Assembly: GCA_977030845.1 (NCBI GenBank)
Contig: OZ365111.1
Span: 21,390,001 to 21,454,000, forward strand
Source: Fimbriosthenelais zetlandica
Lineage: Eukaryota
DNA length: 64,000 nt
Direction: 5' to 3'
Part shown: in pieces, positions 11,600 through 64,000 of the stretch
Numbering within the stretch: the stretch's first letter is position 1
How the letters are laid out: every line of letters begins with the position of its first letter
Made by a program: the position numbers and the translations under genes
The notes under the pieces: model-generated
Databases searched by the model: none
What the model saw: only the letters and a program-made list of their open reading frames with translations
Told to the model about the DNA's origin: nothing

Positions 11600-11685
11600 A
11601 CTCACGTAACCTGAACTGACCCATCAAAGGCAGAATACTTACCTGAAAAAGATGAAAGCGAAAATCAGAAAAAAAATTAAATAAT
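11600..11685 (-). promoter_or_regulatory. Recursive splice site (AG|GT ratchet point at 11643/11642) with 37-nt cryptic RS-exon 11606-11642
   Basis: The minus strand reads ...atttaatttttttctgattttcgctttcatctttttcag|GTAAGTATTCTGCCTTTGATGGGTCAGTTCAGGTTAC|gtgagt. It has a long pyrimidine tract, a perfect regenerated donor and a downstream GTGAGT donor. Confidence 0.7.
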
Positions 11686-25790: not shown

Positions 25791-28317
25791 GTTCCATCCC
25801 AATTTGACACGGTTAATCAATGGCAAATACTCTCACACAAAGCACATTTCTCCTTATCCGATTCTCAAACCCAAAACTGACAGGGTTTACAATAAAGAAT
25901 GAAGGGATCGAGATGTGTCAGCGATCTGAAAGAAATGGATGACAACCCTATTTTCCATAACATTTTCTTTCAGATAAATACTTTGGGGGACAGAAAAATC
26001 TGAATAGTTCTGCTAGAAACTGTAACTACATGCTCCATAGCTTTCTGCCCAAAGTTTTCGCTACTTCTTCTATTGTTCTCTGTATCCACTACATATATAT
26101 ATATTCATGATCACCCTCATCTATACCTTATCTCCATCAAAAGACCCGTCAAGCCCAAGAAATGATAGGAAAAAACATGAGCGGGGACAGTGTGTACTTG
26201 GGGGCAATTTGCTTCTTGTTCTGCAGTGGAGCAAAACAAATGGCAGGCAACTGTCAAATAAAGGCTTCGCGGCAATTTACATTAAACTCCAGTACGATTC
26301 ATCACAGTGCCTTTTAGGAGGGCCTTTGTTGTTAACATAAGCTTTGTCCCCCGGGTCCATGAAAACCTGAAAATATGACCCATTTGTGGGAACAAAAAAG
26401 CGTAATATACTCGCATATTTTTTAAGCTGTACTTTGTTTCAGCTTTTATCAGGGAACAGGGGGTAGTATTTTCAATCGCTGACCTATACGAAATCCACGG
26501 ATTATCCATCATTTTGCAACTGCCAGTTCAACAGTACTCCCTTCCAGGTCTCGAGAGGAAAAATAGATAAAACATATAAGGGCAGATTAAAGTTATGGAG
26601 ACTTCTGGCCGAGATGGCCTGAGAATTTTATCGACCCAAGAGTCCAGTACTATACAGAGGAGCTCTCCTCCTACTCGGCTTGCCAACATAGACTGGCATG
26701 ATGAATTGAATTGTCACTAAAGGCAGAATTAAGTTGTTTAAACAACCTCCACTGCTGTTCCTCCACATTCACGCTTGACAAGAGGCCAAAGTGTCCTTCC
26801 CGTCAGACCAGATGTCTCCCGCCTCCCCTCTCCAATAGCCGTCAACCTTAATTCAACCAAAAGCAGACGCTAAACCAATTTATCTATGCCATCGTTCTGA
26901 AGATCCCCTTATCTTTTATTCTTTTTTTAAAGCAAAACCTCAAAGCCATTTATTTCCACAGTGTTGGACATGATAACCACAGGAAAGAGTTAATCATTGA
27001 TTAAACCACAAATTCCTGAAATATCATTAATTTTCATCAAGGTATACATTCTTTTAAATTATATCCTTCCAATGTTTACTCTTTCCCAGCTCAGGCTTGT
27101 ATGCTCTCCCCCGGGGATTCGATCAGGAAATTGAAAATTTAATTTGTGTATTGTATTAGCAAATGCAGCGAGAGGAGGGTGAACGGTCGGCCAAGCTTAC
27201 TGACTGGCTGATCAGGAAAGGGCGGATCGTACCTGTTGTCCCCATGTCATATTAACTCCTTTCAGCATCCAATTATTGAATGCAATTACCTGCTGTATGT
27301 TCACAGTCAAAGCTGGGGAATCCATCAAGCTTGATAAAAGATCCGACTCTTCAGGAATGTGGATTCATTGAAAAATATAAATCCTCTCTGCCGAAAATGG
27401 ATTTCTAGACTGTTAAAAAGGAACTATGAAATAGATCACACCAGCTTCAGTTAGTGACTATTTCAAGCTAATACTAAACGAACATATTGCCTATAACCAT
27501 TGTGAAGTTTCTCCATTAGTTCCTTTATTACTTGAGGCAATTTAAAGTGGATAGTGGAGAGTACTGTGTTTCAAATAGAGATGCTGAAATTAGCATTAAA
27601 ACCACCAGGCAACTATGCAGTGCATTCACTTTGAATTTTACTAATATCAATAGCAGGTTGTTTTAACATTCTGCTTGACAGTGCTCAAAGTCACCGAGTC
27701 TATGAGAAATATTTGAAATATAGAGTTACAAGCCAGGTTGATTGCTCTCTCGGAAAATCAATCAAGTGGTTATGATTTACCTTTAAATGTTATTGATAAT
27801 TTATCTGCGTAAGTGGCTTCCATTGCAATTTCTAAAACAAGGCAATCACACGGCACAGCAGAGATTCCAATATTAATATAATTATTTATGTGATGGTAAT
27901 TGCAACTAGACATGTGATACTATCCAAATTATTTATTCAGAGACGTTTCAATCCACTATAATACTTGAAAGTATCGACGATAATTATAGATTGTTAGTTG
28001 CCTATATGAAATTAATCCATCAGGTACTTGGGGTTTATTGCATTAGCCAGATCCGACACGTAATTCATACTCCTTGATATATCCTTAAACAAAATTAATG
28101 ACTAAATTTCTTTAATAAGTTTCTGATAAAATGACTTGCAGCTACTGTGATAATGTTTCATTTTGTCTAGATAGGTGAACATATATGCAGAAGCGAACAT
28201 AAGCTGTCCATCCTCGCAGAACATTCCTTCGTATAGAAACACGAGAGATAACATTGAGCTGGGGGTGTACGACTATGACAATGAAGATGTCCTCTTCATA
28301 ATATGTTCACAACTCAC

Positions 28318-28490
28318 GACCACAAAACAGAGATGTAGAAGACATAAACCAGACACAAACGAGTGAGGCAAGTCACCCCTCCATGATAGATGTAACGCGC
28401 CAGTTCCGCTCGTGGCATCCAGATTTCCAATGATACATCGGTGAGGCAGTAACAAACGGCAGAGGACTTCCGCTCTGCTACCGGAAGCTA
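28318..28490 (-). CDS. Candidate promoter plus first coding exon of a minus-strand gene (CDS 28418-28318: MPRAELARYIYHGGVTCLTRLCLVYVFYISVLW-S), signal-peptide or anchor-like
   Basis: Paired ETS-type motifs ACTTCCG (28466-28472) and CCGGAAG (28481-28487) lie upstream. The CpG-rich frame is open with a hydrophobic end, and the donor is TC|GTGAGT at 28317. No homology was recognised. Confidence 0.4.
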
Positions 28491-31400
28491 AGCTCTTCCA
28501 GGCTTCGCCCACCTCTCAAGACTAAGCTCTTCTCGAATCCTCCCTCCCCAGAGCTGTCTCAGATGCTGCAGACACGTCCGAGTAGAGATTCAGGGGTCAC
28601 TACAGTAAATCCCCACAGACCATTAGCCCCCATGCACGATCTGATTCAGATAACTGCGCATGCCTCATGATGGTAATGGCCAGTGGTACTTGGGAAATGG
28701 GGCTCCAATCCATTCCTTTGATGGCCTCATTGGATGGATATTTCTATGGACAGAAGGTAAGGGGTCATATATATGCATGACATGTACAATCTTGGTATGT
28801 TGTTTCAACTTAACTAATAGCAGGTCGAAACGAAGGCCTTTTTATGATCCTCCAATTTGTCACAGTTGTTCAGCGTTGGTATCTAAATGTTCCAAACTAT
28901 TAATAGGGTACATCACTTAGAAAATCTTCATCAGATCTTGTCATCCGAGAGGCTCTACCATGCGATGGTCTACTTGTCGCAACAGAGCCAATGAACGATA
29001 ACAGATACTCACATAATCTCTCTGCAAGATATAAAAGCAATTCACGAAGGCCCTCTGCATAGATACTTCCTTGGTAATTGAGAATTCTGTGAAGGAGGAT
29101 GTCATAATACTTAGCCAACTTTTCCCATTACAAATATAAGCCTTCCGACCTTAGGAGCCCGAGCCTAGAGAGGACCAGGGGAATCACAATGACAAGATGG
29201 GCCCCGGCACAAGTTTCCTCTGCACTCTGGATGATGCATGAGATGGTGTCAGGAGTGAGTGGAATAGGAAATGGGCGCTATAGGATCTTCCTATTGTTTT
29301 ATGTGTAACAAAGCTCGACAGGACCACCCAGGCTGGGCCGCCGACAACCAATCATCAAACGAAGATGAAAATTGCGATGAACTATATATAATGAAATACT
29401 CGGATCAGAACGAAGCACCTCCACAAAACCTCCATGAAGCCTGGTCAAATACTGGCATTAAGTTTTATGGGAAGATATCACTGAGAAATCAAACAATGCT
29501 CAGACAAGACAACAGCATTGTACCCAGTTTAAACCAGGCCTACATTCCGGGTCCACAATTTAAAAAATCGATTCCAAAGGAGAAACTCGATGGAAGCAAC
29601 AATCGGATTGGTGTGTGCTTGGCCATAAGACTACCTAAAATGCATATCGAAAGTGCATTTTACATAATGTGGGACTCATTGAATAGGGCTAAATATCCGT
29701 ACCATATATAGGCAAGGCAATGCAGCAGCAGCTGGGAAATGAGGCCTGGAGTGTAGACCTATTATTTCTGAGAACACTACAATAACAGTGTTGTTGTCAA
29801 GCACCGGTTTTGCTCCTTAGACACGTTGGACGATTGTTTACACCGATAGGCCATTATCTCTCGCCACCACACCCAGCGTTAAATCATCTCAAGCCAACAC
29901 GAACCATCCATAGTCAGGCTATGTGCTGGAGAGGAGGGATTATTGGCTGGATCAAAAACGTTTGTCCGCTACTAGACAATCAGCGATACCCCAATGGGCC
30001 TTAAAATTAAGATGTCTACAGAGTACGGTCTCGGTAATATTTAAATATAATGTATGTTGTTATGTAGTCATTTAAAAAAACTTTAATCTGCCTAATGGTA
30101 ATTTCTAGAATTAATATCCCCTCATAATAAAGTGGCAATACTGCAAGGCATCGAGAAGCAAAATGTGTGAACCTGCTGGGGGTTTTTTCGCTAATAAAAA
30201 ATATCCCATTGAAGAGTATGGACTTTCGACCTTAGCAAGAGCAATATGACAAGTAGGAAGTCATTTATTAAGTTCAAGGATAAGAACAGTCGGCACAAAA
30301 GCCTTTCATCACAACCTAGACGTGAGAACTATTCACTGATTCAAAGTGGCCTATCTGATGTCTGATGAGCTTTCCCAATTTGTGTCTTGTAGATGAAAAA
30401 CACAGTACAACACTTTTCAAAGTAAATTAATCAGGATTTCTGTGGAACAACTAATTAGGAGAGCGTTTTGTTCGCAATTCAATGTAGGCTTTCTAGACGG
30501 TTCCCGGAAACCTGTCATTGCCTTTAGGAGAAGTTAGATTACTCGTGTACAGCCTTCTCATTGGTGCATGTCCCCCAACCAACGCCACTCGTCACCAAAG
30601 CGCTGATTGGACAATATATCACAAAGATGGATCTGTTCATAGCACACCTTCCGGTCACCTGTTATTGATAGGTCGCCTTAGAAACTGCTTGTGTATGCCC
30701 TGGTGGCTAATATCACTCAGATATGACAGATTCAGGCTACGATCGGAGTCCAATTATTTCTTTTGTTATTCATTTAATGTTTAACATTAAAGGAATTAAC
30801 GCTCTTTCAGCTCAATAATAATATGAACCTGATTATGATTTCCAGGTAACTCTTAAATCATCAATTACGTAAGCTCATGGGCTGAGATTATTACTGCTGA
30901 ATCACTCTGACATTGGTAGTTGTAATTCATAGTATGAGTATAGAGAAAAAGCTCTATATATGGACTGAATACAGGCCAGTTGTGAAAGGCTCTACACTTA
31001 ATAAACCCTTGTTCTTCCAACCACAGCCATGAGAGATGACATCTGGCCAGGCTGCTCTCATGTGAAGAAAGAAGATCTAACAGATGGCTCCATCCGAGGC
31101 TACAAACGAACGAATGCATCAAAGAATTTTGAGATTAAGATATAAAGTAGGCAATCAAGGGAAGCTCTAATCCATTCTGTGAAGCATTAGGCTGCCTTAG
31201 CCAGTTCATCACAGACATCCAGTCATTAATAGATGGATTTTATTGGCATCTTCCCGGCTCTGGTGTCTGCTGCTGGCGACTAAAAGACTATTTGAAAAAT
31301 TTACTGCAGCAAACAATTTACAGCCTAAAGTGGAAATTAACCACTGTAGGAAGAACGCGCCAGACTAAAAAGTTCGGAAATGTTTGGAAGTTTTCTGTTT

Positions 31401-32263: not shown

Positions 32264-32414
32264 GTAAGGTATTTCGTTTTATGTGAGAGCCGTTTGTCCC
32301 TTGCTTTTCGCGTTCCTTTAAGTGTATGAAACTAAAAGTTCTGCTTTTGATCTCTTTCTATTCCTATTCTGAGGCAATGTGTGACTGAATGCTTCGGAAT
32401 CTAGACCCACCTAC

Positions 32415-32490
32415 CTCTGATATGGAGAACGGTGTAGAAGAAGTCTTAATTGTCATACTTACCTGAAAGTAGAAAAGGGAAGCATTAGAT
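32415..32490 (-). promoter_or_regulatory. Recursive splice site (AG|GT ratchet point at 32463/32462) with 48-nt cryptic RS-exon 32415-32462
   Basis: The minus strand reads atctaatgcttcccttttctactttcag|GTAAGTATGACAATTAAGACTTCTTCTACACCGTTCTCCATATCAGAG|gtaggt. That is a branch point (ctaat), a pyrimidine tract, CAG directly abutting a perfect donor, and a second strong donor 48 nt later. Confidence 0.7.
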
Positions 32491-35400
32491 TACAACGGCA
32501 AATGCTATACTGTATATTTACTTTCTTTACATATATTGCAACAAAAGCCATATTAACAGGTGCGATTGATTAGTGCACTGGTATCACCTTGGCAGTATAC
32601 CTTTCACAGATCAAAGGTATTGATATCAAAACTGTACCAGTATAATAGGCCTATTCTCTATTGAATGCAGATCAAATACATTATTCTGTACAACCTTAAC
32701 AAATGGATTTAATTCACTATATATGTGCACATATATGTTTCGAAGGTCAACTGGTAAAACCTTGAAATGGTCAGGCCATGCAGATATAACATAAGCTATC
32801 GCTTTAATCTATCTATATATATGTAAATTACAGGAATCCCACTTTAAAAGTCAGAAATAGGTAAAGAAGAAGGGATGAAGGAATGAAAGAGCAGAAGGAA
32901 TTCTATAGGAACAGGACTTTGTAGAAGGAAATGGGCAGGCTGAACAATTATCAAGAGCATCTGTGTTCAAAGCCACCACAAGGGACCAATACCAATCTGC
33001 TCAGAGTGGAAAATCTCTCCCACAAGGCATATAAGACATGGTTAGAGGGAAATTCTCAGACTCTCCCAACAAATCCCCGAAAGAGCCTACACCTCTAGAT
33101 TTTCAAGAAGGGTTTCAAGATTGCTGATTAATTGATAAGAAGATTTAGAACTACACATGTACTATAAAAATACATTTTTCATATTGAACAAATCCTCAAC
33201 TGAAAGAACTGCATAATATGGATCTGGACCCCAGACCTTTCTAATATTGGGATCATGCAGATAAAAGATGAGGAATATCTTGGAAATTCTATGAGAAGAA
33301 ACTTTCAAGACCTTATGTTTGCCCGGAGAACAACTTGGAAAATAAATGCACCGGACATAAATAATAATGGAGGTGGAGATGATTGTTTTTAAGGTAATTG
33401 GAAACTCGTTGATTGGCGTTTAGCAGCATTATGTGGGCCAGCAGTTTTCCCACCATTAACCAGCCCAGGAGAAGGCAATTATTGAGAGAGGCCTCCTGAA
33501 TGAGGGTGAGACAGGGATGTGTTAATTACTCTTGTTAGGGGGTAATCACACACTAGATGATGGCCTGGAATGCCTTGTTAATGGCTCCCATCTTCTTCTT
33601 CTTCCTCCTCCTCGGCCTCCGCAGGGCTGGGGTATGGACGCCTTGATGTTTGAACTCCTTGCTGTTTGCTGCTCCTTGTTTCTTTACCAGTTTTCCTTCA
33701 TAAGCTCCGGTAATGACAGAAGTCTGGCTCTGAACAACACTGTTCACAAGTGAACAAATTGCATCGTTTCAAACATCTTTTCCACCAAAAATCTCCAACT
33801 TTGGTCACTTGTAAAATAAGTAAATAATGGTTGTTTTACACCCAGACAATAATTTCTCAGTTTTCTCAGGATGGCTGTTCTGGGAGGCATATGAAAATGA
33901 CATGATTTAAATTGGTAGAATCCATTTGTCCTAGCCAAACTGCTAGAAATGACGATCTTAGTGAGTGCAAAAATTTAACTTGGGAAGATGCACAGATGAC
34001 TGTCAGAAGAAAAAGATATTTCTACTGCAACTTTCTTATTCACAAGTGGTTTGGAATTTCTGTAATCTCAGGTTTTAACTTTCCGTCTCCCCAGACATAA
34101 AACAAAGACCTATGTACATGGGACTCCAACTGTTGCACATATGATACACTTGAGGTTCTAATTCAATGAAAGCACTCGACCTCTCTTCCTGTAGGTAATA
34201 ATCTCACTATCGTATAGAAACCAGGGTCTAGTCATGGCTTTTCGACATCGGCTTGGCCTCTGTAATCATACAAATGTGGACTGACCACAAACCTAGAGGG
34301 GATACAACACATATTTTCAGCATGAGGAACATGGACCTTGATAGATTTTCTTTCCTGTCAGTCAGTCAGTCAGGGCATCTTCCATTCATAATGCACATCC
34401 TGGAGTCCATAGTTTGTCAGTCTTATAACAAATCGATGTCACTGATAGAATAGTATCCATGTGGGTACGAATATATTAATACAAGAACATAAAAAGTATA
34501 AGCAACTATAAAGCACCTCTGCCGACCAAAAAAATGTTCCAACTAGTATTCCTGATCTATTCCTGGGGCCTGGCCTCGGGTAAGAACTACTGCGACACTA
34601 ACAGAATTGTCTTGACCCGAGGTCTCTTGGATTAGGGTACCGTAGGTCATGTGTAGGAACCTTAATGGATAACTTGGAACTCTTGCAACTTTTTCCGTGA
34701 CTGATCACAATCTCTCGAAGTCAATTATACCAAACAAAAGCAAACGGGTCAAGTTTTGAATAAAACATCAAATTCAGATGAATAAATGAGTAAATACTAC
34801 AAGTAGTAGTCAATTCTGGAAGCGGTTTATAGGGCAAAAGTGACATCAGAGCACAAACGACCCCAGGAGATGCGGAGGTAATCGCGCCTAATGAACAGCA
34901 CTTTGTATTCCCCATTTGCTTGTAACACATCCCTATACTTGTTTTACCACCTCTAAAACACGCCCTCGACACCGTTCCCAGATCAGTACCCAAGGGGAGC
35001 CTCCATTACCCGACACAAGTACATTTTCCGGATTAGACTTGATTTGATTGGCTGGATCCACTGTGGGGAACAAATGGGCGGTCCCACATGTTATATCCCC
35101 CATTCGTCTCTATTACGCCTTCGCTTCCCCGCAAAACAGACCGTATTATAGGTCCAGCCACCTGGTGGCAAGGTTTTAAAATTCATGTCACAAGATCTGG
35201 GTCTGGCTCGGGGCCCTCAACAACATGAGGTTTTCCGAAGCGAGGTTTCCAATAGGGTCAGAAAGAACTTTTGAGGCATTGGATAAGGTTACTTAAATGC
35301 CATTTCCGACATTTAACTTTTTATCGACCATTTAGTGTTTTTTGGCATCCCATTAAATTCTTTCAGAAAATACAAACAGCAGGGGGTTCCACACCATACC

Positions 35401-38244
35401 TGAGGGACCCACCCCGAAAACCTTTTTAAAAACAAAAAACGACAGAAACAGGAAAACGTGAGCAACATTTCAACCACATTTGTTTTGGTAGCTTAGATTC
35501 GGAAACAAGCAATGAACAATACCAAAACCCCCTACTGCATGACCAGGAAATTTTAACCCACTGTTTAACAAAACATAAATACAGCCACAATGACAAGGCC
35601 CTGTGACAAGAGCACTTTCTGAAGAGTTTGTCTCTCGTAACATGCTCTGGGCTTTGCCCGTGTTAACCCTGACATCATAGATCATCCAGGACTTTCCCTA
35701 TCCTGTATATAACTGAGGCCAGGCTACAGCATCAATATTCACACCTAGGACAATAGGAGCTAGGTGTGATGGTGGCGAGGACGGGAGATCACAATACCCC
35801 ATTCACATCCCTCTCTTCACTACATGAGATCTCACTTGATAATGTGATGATGGGGATTGCTTCGCTATGAGGCTTGTGACAGGATATTCTATTCAGCTGC
35901 ATTACAATAAGGCATGCGGAGCTGGAGTGACTTTAGAACAATGATGTAGGATAATTAGTCATCTGGATGCGTCAACATAGGTTTAAGTTGTTCCAGCGAA
36001 TGATCGCTTGTGTGACAGCGAATGCAGCCTGACTTTGCATATATATAAGGAAGTTGCAGGGTGATATCCATGCCATGCATGCAAGCATATAGTAGGATGG
36101 TATTCGGACCATTGGAGCTAATTGTATTGAAAAATTAAAAAAATGGAATTTATATATTTTAACTAGTATAGCTGATGACGGTGCAACAAAGGACTCGGCC
36201 AGGGTTCTTAGTAACTATTGGGATAGGCGGGGGTTCAGATGGAAATTTAAAGCCAAAAAAAAGATATTATAATACCATCATATTTGACTGATAACAAATA
36301 ATTCCGCCCAACAATGAATTAGTTTTACAACAACATGTATGATATAACTCGTTCGAAAACACCCCTGTTTCTAGTCAGGTAGATTCCTGCAAGGATATAT
36401 ACCGCCGATCAATCTTGCCTTATATGCAGCATCAAGACTAACCTCTCACGATAGTGGTGAAATAAAGCCCAAGCCCCGTACACATCCATCACCGTTTTAC
36501 AACTCGGACCACCACCCATAACCAGTTCTGATTTCCGATCAGCAAGTTGGGCATATGTAGATGAGGAGACCTCTGGTCCAGGCGATGATCTCCTGCCTGC
36601 CTGGCTTTGATGAGAAAACGTCCCTATATCTTCCCACGTTTCCCTTTCAACCGCGTTTAGATAAGACTGAGTGGGTATGGTTGCTGGTGCAGTGCAAAGG
36701 TTAGGACCTGTATATGGCAGTTATTCAATGTTTGTAGGGGAAAATCATGGATCCCATTGACATAAAATTATCTATTATTAAATACATAATTTCAGCGAGG
36801 TCAAGGCTTCACTCAAGGCAGATTTGATATTCATACTTAACTGAAAAGTAGTTTTTTATTAAACTAAACAACGGAGCCGTGATATCAACATGAAGTGCAG
36901 TTTCAACAAGTTAACAGCCAAGGTTTGTCACTAAATGAGGTGTCTACAACAATGATTTTTTCTTCAATGTTCATAGCGTAAAAGGTTCCAAGTAGGCCTC
37001 CATTGAGAAAATACTTTATGTAATGGCATAGACTCGGGGCATGACCTACAATCCAAAATCAAATCAAGAAGGCCATCTATGAAATTGTCTGGCTTTGCCT
37101 CCCACATACATCAGATTGAAATCTCATCCTCATCCCATCCAAATCTGCTTTAAGTGAGAGGCCGCAGTGAGCAAGCCTGAGCCGCCATTCTCTCTCTCTG
37201 AACGCCATCAAAGCCCGAAGTCAAGTATTCACACTCCGGGCAAAGTTTATCGCCCAGAAGATGCATATTTGGGTGTTGGCTTCCGTGGGGTGAAGATTCT
37301 GGCAGGTCATTTCCTTGCTTCGACATAGGCAGGGCTTTTGGAATTCAGAAATAAATGGGAGGGTCACTCAAAGGGCTATAAGCGGCGGAAGCTGAGCGAA
37401 TGACTGAATGCATGAGCGGTAATTGGAAGCACATTTTCACCGCACCATACCGCATGGATTGCCGCAATATTAAAGAGGACCTATCGGCGATGCAAAAAAA
37501 GTTGAGTTGGGAAATGTGCTTAAAATTTTGTTGAAATAGAATCAGATTTGGTAAAAGTTTAGGAAATTGTGCATCAGAAGAGAGATCAATAATAAAGTTG
37601 GCACGATAAAACTCTCATTGATCTTTGCTGATAAAGCGGCATGCCACATAAATGATTGCCATCTGTATTGCCCTTTACTTAATTTAAGAAAGACATTATC
37701 CTGGTATCTATAGAGTCGAACTATGCCACACGATTTACTGGTCTAGACCAAATGTTCAAACGACTGCCTTAAAGTAGAAAGTGCAATTATAGTCCAAGAA
37801 TGTCATTCTAGCTCCTAAAAGCTTTAACTGAAATAATCCCTTTTCTTTCATACAATTTACCATATAATTTAATAATGAACACAATTAAGGCATCATGTGA
37901 AAGATAATGTAGTTTCAAAAATACCGCAGAAAATGAGCAGAGATTTTCTACAACAGAGACAACAATTCTATCCAGGACAAAACGGTCGAGAGCAGGAAGA
38001 ATAGTACCAACACAATACAATGTACTGATCTGAAAACGATGGACAGAATATGATTTGTATGGAATATAAACAAAAGCTAATAGGGTGCACTCATAAGAAA
38101 ATATTCTACTAGAGCCAAAGTGATTGCTAGAGGAATTACGTATCCCCTTGTGGTCCATCTTAGCAAAGTGCCTCTGACCTAAGAAGCATCTCCCTCGGGT
38201 CTAACCTAATCGCACCATTGTTTCAAAAGACATCCTCCCTGAAA

Positions 38245-60884: not shown

Positions 60885-61962
60885 GTATACGAGTTTCGAG
60901 CCCTTGCTCGCACGTATGAATAGAGGGATACATAAAATCTGTAAGCAATAAGTGGCTGGTGTAGGGTCCTAAACTTTCACTGAAACGCCAAATACAGAGC
61001 AAAATCAGATGAAATTGAACTTCAACCATTGAAACTTCCTGCAACGTGACAACTCTTAAACACTGGTTCAGATTTGTTAAGGATTTCAAGGAAATTTTCC
61101 GAAAGAAGTCAATGCTTCCGGAATATAAGAAGAATTAATATTAATCCAATATTGCAATTTTTGCAAATGTGAGTCAATATAAACGTGGATCCTTGTCTTT
61201 TTTGTATCTCCTATCGATAAGGCTTTAAGGGTAAATCGTTAAAAGGCAAAAGTGGAAACTATCTTATAAAGAGTCAACTTGGCAATATAAATGGGATAAA
61301 CCGAATCAATTCAGCAGGCGAACACTAATAAACGTGATAGCTTCTGAGCGTTGTACACTTGTACCAATCACATCTCTGGTTTCACATCACGTGGTAGGCT
61401 GATTTGCATGAATCTCTCCGCTGTGGCCTTGCGATAAGAACCTCTGGCTATTTTGACTATTTTTATTTCGACTGCGAATGTTAGGGCGGACATAAAAAGT
61501 AATACCATGGACACAGCGAGGGAATATTGGTACTAAGAAAGTTCCCTTGTAGTACGTGTTGCTCTTATTGTGGTTCACACACTGGGAAGAAAGATTGTCC
61601 AGATCGAGTGTCTCCAGATCATACGCCTCCCGATCATGGGTTGAAATACCAGTACACAATCATGATGAAAATGTTTTTTTCTATGACATTTTCTATGACA
61701 ACTGAATTCAGAATACGATACATTGCAGATTTCCCTTGAAACGTATGGATGATATTTTTTCCAAATCAGATTGAACAACCTATAGAATGCTGATTTTTCA
61801 GAAATTTCAAACATTTTCTATGAGCAAAATTACTGACAGTATACTAAGAGTAATCTTCCACATAGTTCTTATATTTTCAAATACTTATTCTTTAATCCAT
61901 ATTTTTTAACTTATACTGAGCGGGACGAATATTCTCATCTAACAAGAGGATCACATTTTCAG

Positions 61963-62209: not shown

Positions 62210-63117
62210 CATGCACTAGGGACAAGATAAAATGGCTATCATTAGAAGTTAGAAAAGAGACAGTGCTAAAGACCATAGCCTTCCAAGTCCGATAAAGTGG
62301 AAATTATCCTAATAAAACCTGATTATGAACAAAATATATAAAGGTACCACATAGGGCATACACGTTCAATAATGCACTTAAGTTCCCATCGAGAGGAACA
62401 TTTTTAATTCAAATTATTATGCCAACTAACTGCAATCTATATACAAAAGTACTTCAAAGTTCAGATCATGTTTGCTTTGAGATCAGAGCACGGGATTGTA
62501 AGTTAAAGACCCTTATTAAACCCACTAACAAGTTAAGACCTTCACTTCAATGGCTCCTATTGGCTTCCTCTCAACTCTTTTATGCCAATGTTAATGTGCT
62601 GCACAAGGAAACATTACCTTGATGTTTGCCCCGGAGGCTTTGATACAAGCCTTTGAAACAAAACACCAAGTTTTATCTTCGGGTGTACTCAAATCGAGAC
62701 AAAGTGACAATCAGGTTAAGCTTCTCCACGTTATCCACGTTATCATAAATAACTTGTTTTATTATAGAAGCTAATTTTGTTAATAACAGATGCTTCAGAT
62801 CTAATAGTAAGGAATCTTATTACGCCTATGAGTTTGGTATTTGATTTCCAACGCAAGAATTCAAACGTTAAAATATCCCGATATTCTTTTATATGGACGC
62901 GTTGCTTAACATCCATTGAGTAAATTTTCTCAGAGCAAGGAGGAAACCCGTTGTTGGCAAACAATGTTCTCGAATGGCATCAATGGTTTTTATGTGCCTC
63001 CCACTAAAACAGTTGGGGACATGGCTGACATATGATATCCCAGTTAGCAGCACTCGGTGGGGAAGGGAAATTGTTAATTTTGGTGAATTATCTTCAATGA
63101 ATGGAACTGTATAAAGT

Positions 63118-63123
63118 ACTTAC
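63118..63123 (-). promoter_or_regulatory. 5' splice donor (GTAAGT) ending the TPST exon
   Basis: The minus strand reads ...TTA TCA AA|gtaagtac. The ORF-track stop (TAA at 63120-63122) lies inside this consensus donor. Confidence 0.92.
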
Positions 63124-63980
63124 TTTGATAATGAGACTCCTCCTGCCTGACCTATAGTCTTCTCATGGTGTAGGACCACGTTATTCCACCCAACGTCGAG
63201 AAACGCCAAGATTCTCCTCATCTCAGCCTCTGGATGTAGAACTAAATCTTCATAGTGCACAGGCAAGCAGACCTTGTCCCCTACACTCAAACACTGGTTA
63301 TACATATTCTCTATGGCACGGTTCCAGTCCTGTATGGCACCGCGGTATGAATGGCTGTCGAAGCCTTTAATTGTCACTTTACGCGAGATGATGGAATGAA
63401 CTGTGGCTCGTCCGTCCCTGATCATCAGGAGGAACTTGGAATTGGGAAAGATTTTTGCAATTTTGGAAATGGAGCGCAGGGCGAAGGGGTCCTTGTTGCA
63501 GAGTCGGCGTGCTTGCTCCCCGTGTTTGGATATGATACTAAGTATGTAGGCCCCTAGGGCATCGTTAAGCACTTCCTCTGTTATTTTAGCTTCTTTCAGA
63601 CGGTTAGACTCGAGTGGGGATTTCATCATTTGTGCATGCATTCCAAGTATTCTTGGGATGACACGCGTTTCCTCCCCACACCTGATGTCTGGGTGTGCGT
63701 CCAGCATTGCACGTGCCAGGGTGGTCCCACTGCGCGGCACCCCGCCCACCCATATCAAGGGGACTTTCTTATTATAAGCTACGAAGTCACTGCCCGTCCC
63801 ATCACCATCATAGAGGTAGTTGGACTTGAGCGACATTTGTCTATACACAGAAGAGTCATCGTCTTCTAATTGTGAAGAGTCTGTGATCTGTTTGACGATG
63901 ACTATGAGGGCAACACAAAAACCGAAACCCACAAAAACTTGGATTTTGGAGAGACGGCGCATGAGTCTTTGGATCCACAT
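63124..63980 (-). CDS. TPST: Protein-tyrosine (tyrosylprotein) sulfotransferase, first coding exon (partial CDS; C-terminal exons not found in the window)
   Basis: The 286-aa ORF has an N-terminal type II membrane anchor ([15 protein letters not shown]). It carries the TPST signatures [52 protein letters not shown] and YEDLVLHP. It ends in GGVSLSK, where animal TPST genes are known to have an intron, and the junction reads TCA AA|GTAAGT (phase 2). Confidence 0.97.
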
Positions 63981-64000
63981 CTTGCCGAGGACAACCCGTT

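What the first reader, a model, noticed from the sequence alone, without database searches (positions are those of the whole stretch)
32415..32490. Textbook recursive-splicing ratchet point with a 48-nt cryptic RS-exon on the TPST strand
Seen in the sequence: on the minus strand, a branch point (ctaat), a pyrimidine tract and TTTCAG run directly into GTAAGTAT. The junction CAG|GTAAGTAT is fully complementary to the 11-nt 5' end of U1. A second strong donor (GAG|GTAGGT) follows 48 nt later. Established knowledge: recursive splicing in Drosophila and vertebrate long introns uses AG|GT ratchet points backed by short cryptic exons for exon definition. Inference: the site lies 30.7 kb below the TPST donor. 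Splicing TPST onto it would regenerate AAA|GTAAGTAT, while including the exon would give AAG TAA, an immediate stop removing the TPST C-terminus. That could act as a built-in on/off (NMD) switch. Read in frame 0 the exon is open and holds an ATG (VSMTIKTSSTPFSISE), so use by another promoter is also possible. I know of no description of recursive splicing in a TPST gene.
Basis: partly seen in the sequence, partly recalled or inferred. Interest (0 to 1): 0.88.

Follow-up and report, generated by a model that had tools for sequence, protein, structure and literature searches.

The report
Conserved recursive splice site, TPST intron
A giant intron of an invertebrate tyrosine-sulfotransferase gene holds a site where an intron end is fused directly to an intron start, the fly-style "ratchet point" for cutting a long intron out in steps; a related species keeps it in the matching place, but no RNA data could be examined.

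Summary
On the minus strand a branch-point-like ctaat, a 16/17 pyrimidine tract and TTTCAG run straight into GTAAGTAT (AG ends at 32463, GT starts at 32462). A GAG|GTAGGT donor follows 48 nt later. The site lies 30,662 nt downstream of the donor of a large TPST coding exon (63998-63124).

It is not chance. The 14-mer TTTCAGGTAAGTAT occurs twice in the window, both on the TPST strand (32462 and 11642), and in none of the shuffles.

New here: a related species (TPST exon 83% identical in protein, introns otherwise unalignable) has TTTCAG|GTAAGT on the TPST strand. It sits 2.4 kb upstream of the same five collinear conserved non-coding blocks that lie 1.8-5.3 kb downstream of the window's site. 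Only the 12-nt core is conserved; the "RS-exon" is not.

Best reading: a Drosophila-type zero-length recursive splice site, a known mechanism. The scan had already noted many such sites elsewhere in this genome.

The AAG-TAA stop follows automatically from the consensus in a phase-2 intron. The 16-codon ORF and the +48 donor are not conserved.

No sequencing runs were listed, so splicing itself is unverified. New member of a known kind; moderate interest.

The parts
63124..64000 (-). Large TPST coding exon (292 codons visible; it runs off the window end), ending ...GGVSLSK with a phase-2 donor.
   Evidence: Pfam Sulfotransfer_3 6e-52. Homologues are 92/83/84/73% identical, and their ORFs all stop at the same K-TAA, so the donor position is conserved. 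Lingula and Tubulanus have the same intron position.
63114..63127 (-). TPST 5' splice site AAA|GTAAGTAC (last exon base 63124).
   Evidence: 8/11 match to U1.
32484..32488 (-). Branch-point-like ctaat, with its A 23 nt upstream of the junction.
   Evidence: A TTAAC sits at -24 in one haplotype of the relative.
32463..32483 (-). Pyrimidine tract (16 of 17 Y at -20..-4), TT at -6/-5 and the acceptor CAG. No AG occurs in the preceding 40 nt.
   Evidence: The TT rule comes from 10.1101/006163.
32455..32465 (-). Ratchet point RP1: CAG|GTAAGTAT, with the junction between 32463 and 32462.
   Evidence: 11/11 U1 complement. 0 of 300 shuffles reach it. The TTTCAG|GTAAGT core is invariant in the relative's syntenic site.
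32415..32462 (-). Putative cryptic 48-nt RS-exon. It is not conserved and has a stop in the TPST frame at its second codon.
32407..32417 (-). Downstream donor GAG|GTAGGTGG (7/11 match; U1 duplex -11.5 kcal/mol), a candidate exon-definition donor.
   Evidence: No counterpart at that distance in the relative (nearest AAT|GTACGT at +35).
11635..11648 (-). Second ratchet point RP2, with the identical TTTCAG|GTAAGTAT (junction 11643/11642). It has 15/17 Y and a TAC|GTGAGT donor at +37.
   Evidence: The flanks are unrelated to those of RP1.
27117..30637 (.). Five collinear conserved non-coding blocks (30500-30637, 29831-29894, 29213-29301, 28449-28636, 27117-27158). They anchor RP1 to the relative's ratchet point.
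   Evidence: tblastx scores are alike in all frames, so the blocks are not coding. There is no Rfam family and no CpG island.

Best explanation
RP1 (junction 32463|32462, minus strand) is a Drosophila-type intronic ratchet point, that is, a zero-length recursive splice site in the TPST intron, which is at least 63 kb long. Proposed course (inferred, not shown): the TPST donor at 63124 is first spliced to the RP1 acceptor (branch A near 32485, pyrimidine tract, CAG), removing 30.7 kb. The acceptor is probably recognised by exon definition across a short cryptic exon, with U1 on the +48 donor. The join recreates AAA|GTAAGTAT, which matches the gene's own donor in its first 10 nt. That donor is then spliced to RP2 (11643|11642), removing another 20.8 kb, and then to an acceptor beyond the window start. 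The mature mRNA carries no trace of these steps. Shown here: the motif, its improbability by chance, its strand, its fly-like details, and its retention at the syntenic place in a second species whose intron is otherwise unalignable.
For: (1) The motif is exact and far beyond chance: two 11/11 U1 matches with pyrimidine tracts on the TPST strand, none on the other strand, and none in 300 shuffles. The 14-mer has an expected count of 0.00.
(2) The two sites share only the 14-mer, and their flanks are unique in the window, so they are not repeat copies.
(3) Fly ratchet-point details are met. TT at -5/-6 is present in 99.5% of fly RPs (10.1101/006163). The 40 nt upstream are free of AG, and a branch-like motif lies at -23. 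A downstream donor gives a 48-nt cryptic exon, against about 50 nt in flies (PMC8605326). Segments of 30.7 and 20.8 kb fall inside the fly range of 2.6-63.6 kb.
(4) Host context: a TPST exon with a conserved phase-2 donor. No C-terminal TPST exon was found anywhere in the window.
(5) Conservation: in the relative, the only TTTCAGGTAAGT in all fetched loci lies on the TPST sense strand, 48.1 kb below its donor and 2.4 kb upstream of the same collinear conserved blocks. It is present in both of that assembly's contigs, which are probably haplotypes. In the alignment only the 12-nt core is invariant.
(6) The same scan noted many similar sites in other giant introns of this genome. These are leads that I did not test.
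Against: No RNA evidence of any kind: no runs were listed. The TPST C-terminal exon is not in the window, so the claim that both sites lie in the TPST intron is inferred. The relative has no RP-grade site in the first 48 kb of its intron, so such a length can be handled without one. No RP2 counterpart was found within 22 kb downstream of the relative's RP. By U1 duplex energy the +48 donor (-11.5 kcal/mol) is not weaker than the regenerated donor (-7.5), so complete skipping of the cryptic exon cannot be read from the sequence.
Confidence: 0.72

Rival explanations
1. The 48-nt piece (32462-32415) is an expressed poison or cassette exon. Choice between the regenerated donor and the +48 donor would act as a regulated on/off switch, truncating TPST after K292 and possibly triggering NMD.
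For: The +48 donor GAG|GTAGGT pairs well with U1 (-11.5 against -7.5 kcal/mol for the regenerated donor). Inclusion gives AAG TAA. Expressed RS-exons exist in flies and vertebrates (PMC8605326).
Against: The stop follows automatically from GTAAGT after any phase-2 exon. The exon body and the +48 donor are not conserved in the relative, where the nearest donor is AAT|GTACGT at +35. In flies, conserved exon content marks expressed RS-exons and poor conservation marks cryptic ones (PMC8605326).
Confidence: 0.1
2. The sites are real splice elements, but they belong to another unannotated minus-strand transcript (a nested gene or lncRNA) rather than to the TPST pre-mRNA.
For: The downstream TPST exon was not seen. 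A conserved non-coding cluster with promoter-like boxes (CCAAT, CGGAAGT) lies 2-4 kb downstream of RP1.
Against: No other coding exon, Pfam domain or RNA family was found in the 63 kb. There is no CpG island at the cluster. In both species the RP lies downstream of the TPST donor on the same strand. Any host transcript would still use the site as a ratchet point.
Confidence: 0.1
3. The element is a strong intronic U1-binding site, for example one that suppresses premature cleavage and polyadenylation, or a splicing decoy, and no actual splicing occurs at it.
For: It is perfectly complementary to U1 over 11 nt.
Against: The conserved core includes the acceptor half (TTTCAG). All four copies have pyrimidine tracts and AG-free zones, which a pure U1 site does not need.
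Confidence: 0.05
4. The site is a chance juxtaposition or part of a repeat family.
For: AG|GT dinucleotide pairs are common (195 on the minus strand).
Against: 0 of 300 and 0 of 100 shuffles reach it. The flanks are unique. The position is conserved in another species.
Confidence: 0.01

Closest known systems
Drosophila intronic ratchet points (zero-nucleotide recursive splice sites; Hatton 1998, Burnette 2005, Duff 2015 = 10.1101/006163, Joseph/Lai PMC8605326)
   Same: The (Y)nTTNCAG|GTAAGT core with TT at -6/-5. Location on the sense strand of a very long intron. Segments of 20-30 kb. A short cryptic exon of about 50 nt with its own donor. A core conserved between species while the cryptic exon is not. 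The cryptic exon carries a stop.
   Different: The host is not an insect: its TPST groups with unnamed assemblies and only loosely with brachiopod and nemertean sequences. There are no RNA data. After the first step the regenerated donor carries AAA rather than CAG upstream, so it is no stronger than the cryptic-exon donor.
Computationally predicted RP-site enrichment in large introns of invertebrates (Shepard et al. 2009, PMC2773006)
   Same: Sense-strand excess of RP sites in introns over 50 kb was reported in fly, mosquito, bee, beetle and sea urchin (0.5-2.2 per 100 kb). Here there are 2 in 63 kb against 0 on the complement.
   Different: That work was statistical and genome-wide, and it covered no spiralian-like animal. 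Here a single site is shown to be syntenically conserved.
Vertebrate RS-exons (Sibley et al. 2015, as summarised in PMC8605326)
   Same: A 3' splice site is followed by a regenerated 5' splice site and a downstream competing donor, and inclusion gives a premature stop.
   Different: Vertebrate sites are few and are often expressed exons. Here the motif and density are fly-like, and the exon body is not conserved.

Membership tests
Drosophila-type intronic ratchet point (zero-length recursive splice site) | Juxtaposed acceptor|donor matching (Y)nNCAG|GTAAGT | tested here: met
   16/17 Y plus CAG|GTAAGTAT, an 11/11 U1 complement.
Drosophila-type intronic ratchet point (zero-length recursive splice site) | TT at positions -5 and -6 of the acceptor (99.5% of fly RPs; 10.1101/006163) | tested here: met
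   TTTCAG is present in RP1, RP2 and both copies in the relative.
Drosophila-type intronic ratchet point (zero-length recursive splice site) | Lies on the sense strand inside a very long intron | tested here: met
   The site is on the same strand as the TPST exon and 30.7 kb below its donor. No downstream TPST exon was found in 63 kb. That the intron continues past the window start is inferred.
Drosophila-type intronic ratchet point (zero-length recursive splice site) | Excess over the complementary strand and over chance | tested here: met
   2 on minus, 0 on plus, 0 in 300 shuffles; the 14-mer has an expected count of 0.00.
Drosophila-type intronic ratchet point (zero-length recursive splice site) | Acceptor|donor core conserved between species while the flanks and cryptic exon diverge | tested here: met
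   The relative's site (L011:14206 and L012:14398) is anchored by five collinear conserved blocks, and only TTTCAGGTAAGT is invariant. Only one other species was tested.
Drosophila-type intronic ratchet point (zero-length recursive splice site) | Short cryptic RS-exon (about 50 nt) closed by a downstream donor that serves exon definition | tested here: inconclusive
   Donors are present at +48 (RP1), +37 (RP2) and +35 (relative). Donors of this quality are not rare by chance, and their function was not tested.
Drosophila-type intronic ratchet point (zero-length recursive splice site) | RNA evidence: exon-RP junction reads, saw-tooth intron coverage, lariats | not testable with these tools
Expressed or regulated RS-exon (poison exon) | Exon body and its donor conserved; product detectable | tested here: not met
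   The exon body, the ATG frame and the +48 donor are absent in the relative. Expression was not testable.

The most novel reading that the evidence does not exclude
Once the TPST exon is joined, the regenerated donor (AAA|GTAAGTAT) pairs with U1 no better than the +48 donor (GAG|GTAGGT). The 48-nt RS-exon could therefore be included in a regulated share of transcripts, giving a species-specific poison-exon switch that removes the TPST C-terminus. More broadly, fly-type ratchet points would then be both a conserved intron-removal aid and a source of new regulatory exons in a non-insect, non-vertebrate lineage whose TPST intron grew from under 4 kb to over 63 kb.
Probability: 0.1. Interest if true: 0.55.

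Novelty: new member of a known kind. Interest (0 to 1): 0.38.

Why it matters
Recursive splicing has been shown experimentally only in Drosophila and vertebrates. Outside them the evidence I found is statistical enrichment of RP motifs in four insects and a sea urchin (PMC2773006).

This site adds a concrete, syntenically conserved ratchet point in an unidentified non-insect invertebrate. The intron that holds it is short in Lingula (3.4 kb) and Tubulanus (0.6 kb) but giant here. That suggests ratchet points are acquired and then held by selection as introns expand.

It gives a precise RT-PCR or RNA-seq target: junctions 63124^32462 and 63124^11642.

It does not reveal a new mechanism, and the same scan has flagged many comparable sites in this genome.

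Tried and rejected
- **RNA test.** The look-up of sequencing runs on the TPST exon (kind rna) and on the RP region (kind any) listed no run, so read laying could not be used.
- **Downstream TPST exon.** A regex search and tblastn with 63 homologue C-termini found nothing in the window. A weak recurring hit at 34986-35063 is not TPST-like on inspection. The exon was also not found in about 70 kb of the relative's intron.
- **Walking the relative's contig.** The first 48 kb held no RP-grade site; the best was CAG|GTAAAAGT at 39.4 kb. No RP2 counterpart was found within 22 kb beyond the conserved RP.
- **Closest relative.** The 92%-identical relative is available only as 5-kb genomic contigs. The 84%-identical relative returned no DNA.
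- **Species identity.** Cluster look-up gave no names. A TPST tree places the window only with unnamed assemblies.
- **Other genes in the intron.** The ten longest ORFs have no Pfam match, and there are no Rfam or tRNA hits.
- **Coding use of the 16-codon frame.** Rejected: it is not conserved, and the ORFs around the site are too short to search.
- **Repeat origin.** Rejected.
- **Literature.** No paper in the searched library combines recursive splicing with TPST. The two that combine it with molluscs are, by title, unrelated reviews.

Full report
**Observation.** A ctaat (32488-32484) is followed by an almost pure pyrimidine tract and TTTCAG ending at 32463. GTAAGTAT follows immediately from 32462, and GAG|GTAGGT comes exactly 48 nt later. 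The 11-mer CAGGTAAGTAT is the exact complement of the U1 snRNA 5' end (established knowledge; predicted duplex -14.0 kcal/mol). There is no AG in the 40 nt before the acceptor, and the branch-like A lies at -23.

**Host gene.** The far end of the window (63998-63124, minus) is a 292-codon open exon with a Sulfotransfer_3 domain (6e-52). It is 92-73% identical to unnamed TPST ORFs and about 70% identical to Lingula and Capitella TPST. It ends ...GGVSLSK with the donor AAA|GTAAGTAC in phase 2. The four closest homologues are ORF calls that all stop at the same K-TAA, so the donor position is conserved. Lingula and Tubulanus have an intron at the same place.

RP1 lies 30,662 nt downstream of the donor. 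That stop is not a special feature. Any GTAAGT following a phase-2 exon gives xxG TAA, and the unspliced TPST donor gives the same stop.

**Is the site in the TPST intron?** No TPST C-terminal exon is detectable anywhere in the window. I tested this with motif searches and with tblastn using 63 homologue C-termini at E up to 10. The intron is therefore at least 63.1 kb long and leaves the window. This step is inferred. No other gene is apparent in the intron: the ten longest ORFs have no Pfam match, and there are no Rfam or tRNA hits.

**Chance.** I scored every AG|GT for its match to the 11-nt U1 complement and for pyrimidines at -20..-4.
- Two sites on the minus strand reach 11/11 with 16/17 and 15/17 pyrimidines (32462 and 11642). 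No site on the plus strand comes near, and none of 300 dinucleotide shuffles reaches 11/11 with at least 12 Y. At 10/11 or better the shuffle mean is 0.037.
- The shared 14-mer TTTCAGGTAAGTAT has an expected count of 0.00.
- A loose 15-mer with one mismatch allowed is not significant (expected 0.54), so the signal lies in the full-length match.
- The two sites share nothing beyond the 14-mer, and their flanks are unique in the window. They are not repeat copies.

**Comparison with relatives.** No sequencing run was listed for the window, so RNA could not be examined. I therefore walked along the contig of the 83%-identical relative (ENA assembly, 2.79-Mb contig), using ORF look-ups to fetch overlapping 20-kb pieces.
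- Its TPST donor is AAA|GTGAGT. The first 48 kb of its intron has no RP-grade site and does not align with the window.
- At 48.1 kb it has cttcttttattcttttcag|GTAAGT (15/17 Y) on the TPST sense strand. A second 2.15-Mb contig of the same assembly, probably the other haplotype, has the same site.
- From 2.4 kb downstream of that site lie five blocks that align collinearly with window 30637-30500, 29894-29831, 29301-29213, 28636-28449 and 27158-27117. In the window these lie 1.8-5.3 kb downstream of RP1.
- TTTCAGGTAAGT occurs nowhere else in any fetched locus.
- In a MAFFT alignment of RP1, RP2 and the two copies from the relative, the only contiguous invariant stretch is TTTCAGGTAAGT; everything around it is unalignable.
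- The two contigs of the relative differ at 8 of 120 positions around the site and at none in the core. That count is too small to carry weight.

This is the pattern described for fly ratchet points: a strongly conserved acceptor|donor core and a poorly conserved cryptic exon (PMC8605326; 10.1101/006163).

**Fit to the known family.**
- Fly ratchet points have TT at -5/-6 in 99.5% of cases. Their intron segments span 2.6-63.6 kb, with a median of 16 kb. They have a cryptic RS-exon of about 50 nt with its own donor.
- All four sites here have TTTCAG. The segments are 30.7 kb, 20.8 kb and at least 11.6 kb. Donors lie at +48, +37 and +35.
- Sense-strand RP enrichment in introns over 50 kb was reported for four insects and a sea urchin at 0.5-2.2 sites per 100 kb (PMC2773006). 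Here there are 2 in 63 kb.

**What is not supported.**
- The RS-exon sequence, its ATG-containing frame and the +48 donor have no counterpart in the relative. A selected NMD switch or a coding use from another promoter therefore has no comparative support.
- One nuance keeps the inclusion idea alive. After the first step the donor is AAA|GTAAGTAT (9/11, -7.5 kcal/mol), the same as the gene's own donor in its first 10 nt. The +48 donor pairs with U1 at -11.5 kcal/mol. Donor competition therefore cannot be called from sequence alone.
- The relative handles 48 kb without a ratchet point, and no RP2 counterpart was found within 22 kb past its RP. All look-ups were then exhausted.

**Context and novelty.** The homologous intron is 3.4 kb in Lingula and 0.6 kb in Tubulanus, so the giant intron and its ratchet points are lineage-specific acquisitions. 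A TPST tree places the window only with unnamed assemblies, and the animal remains unidentified. Earlier notes of this scan list many ratchet-point candidates in other giant introns of the same genome, including the second site of this window. I used them as leads only. I found no paper that links recursive splicing with TPST.

**Verdict.**
- Real, non-random and evolutionarily retained.
- Most likely a fly-type recursive splice site.
- A new member of a known kind, with splicing still unverified.

Noticed in passing
window 11635-11648 (minus): A second ratchet-point candidate has the identical 14-mer TTTCAG|GTAAGTAT, a 15/17 pyrimidine tract and a TAC|GTGAGT donor at +37. It lies 20.8 kb downstream of RP1. 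No counterpart was found within 22 kb past the relative's RP.
   Followed up: partly
window 27117-30637: A cluster of five collinear blocks (42-190 nt, 65-83% identity) is conserved with the 83% relative inside an otherwise unalignable intron. tblastx scores are equal in all frames, so the blocks are non-coding. They contain CCAAT, TTTCCGGGAA and CGGAAGT-like boxes and have no CpG island. The cluster is probably an intronic enhancer or an internal promoter.
   Followed up: partly
window 61363-61442: An 81-nt intronic block 1.7 kb below the TPST donor is 78% identical to L002:3964-4042 of the 92% relative. It was not detected in the 83% relative.
   Followed up: no
window 36831-36851 (minus): ctacttttcag|TTAAGTATGA closely resembles the RP1 core but has TT in place of GT and a poor pyrimidine tract. 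It could be a decayed ratchet point or a chance match (E 0.38). The relative has a weak CAG|GTAAAAGT site 8.7 kb upstream of its RP, kept in both of its contigs.
   Followed up: no
L009 (Lingula), L010 (Tubulanus) versus the window: The same phase-2 intron after ...SLS(K/R) is 3.4 kb in Lingula and 0.6 kb in Tubulanus. It is over 63 kb here and over 70 kb in the 83% relative, so the expansion is large and lineage-specific.
   Followed up: partly
L011 versus L012 (ENA ERZ25767047, contigs ctg38978 and ctg38884): The relative's assembly carries the whole TPST locus on two megabase contigs that are 95.3% identical over 2 kb around the RP. They are probably uncollapsed haplotypes.
   Followed up: partly
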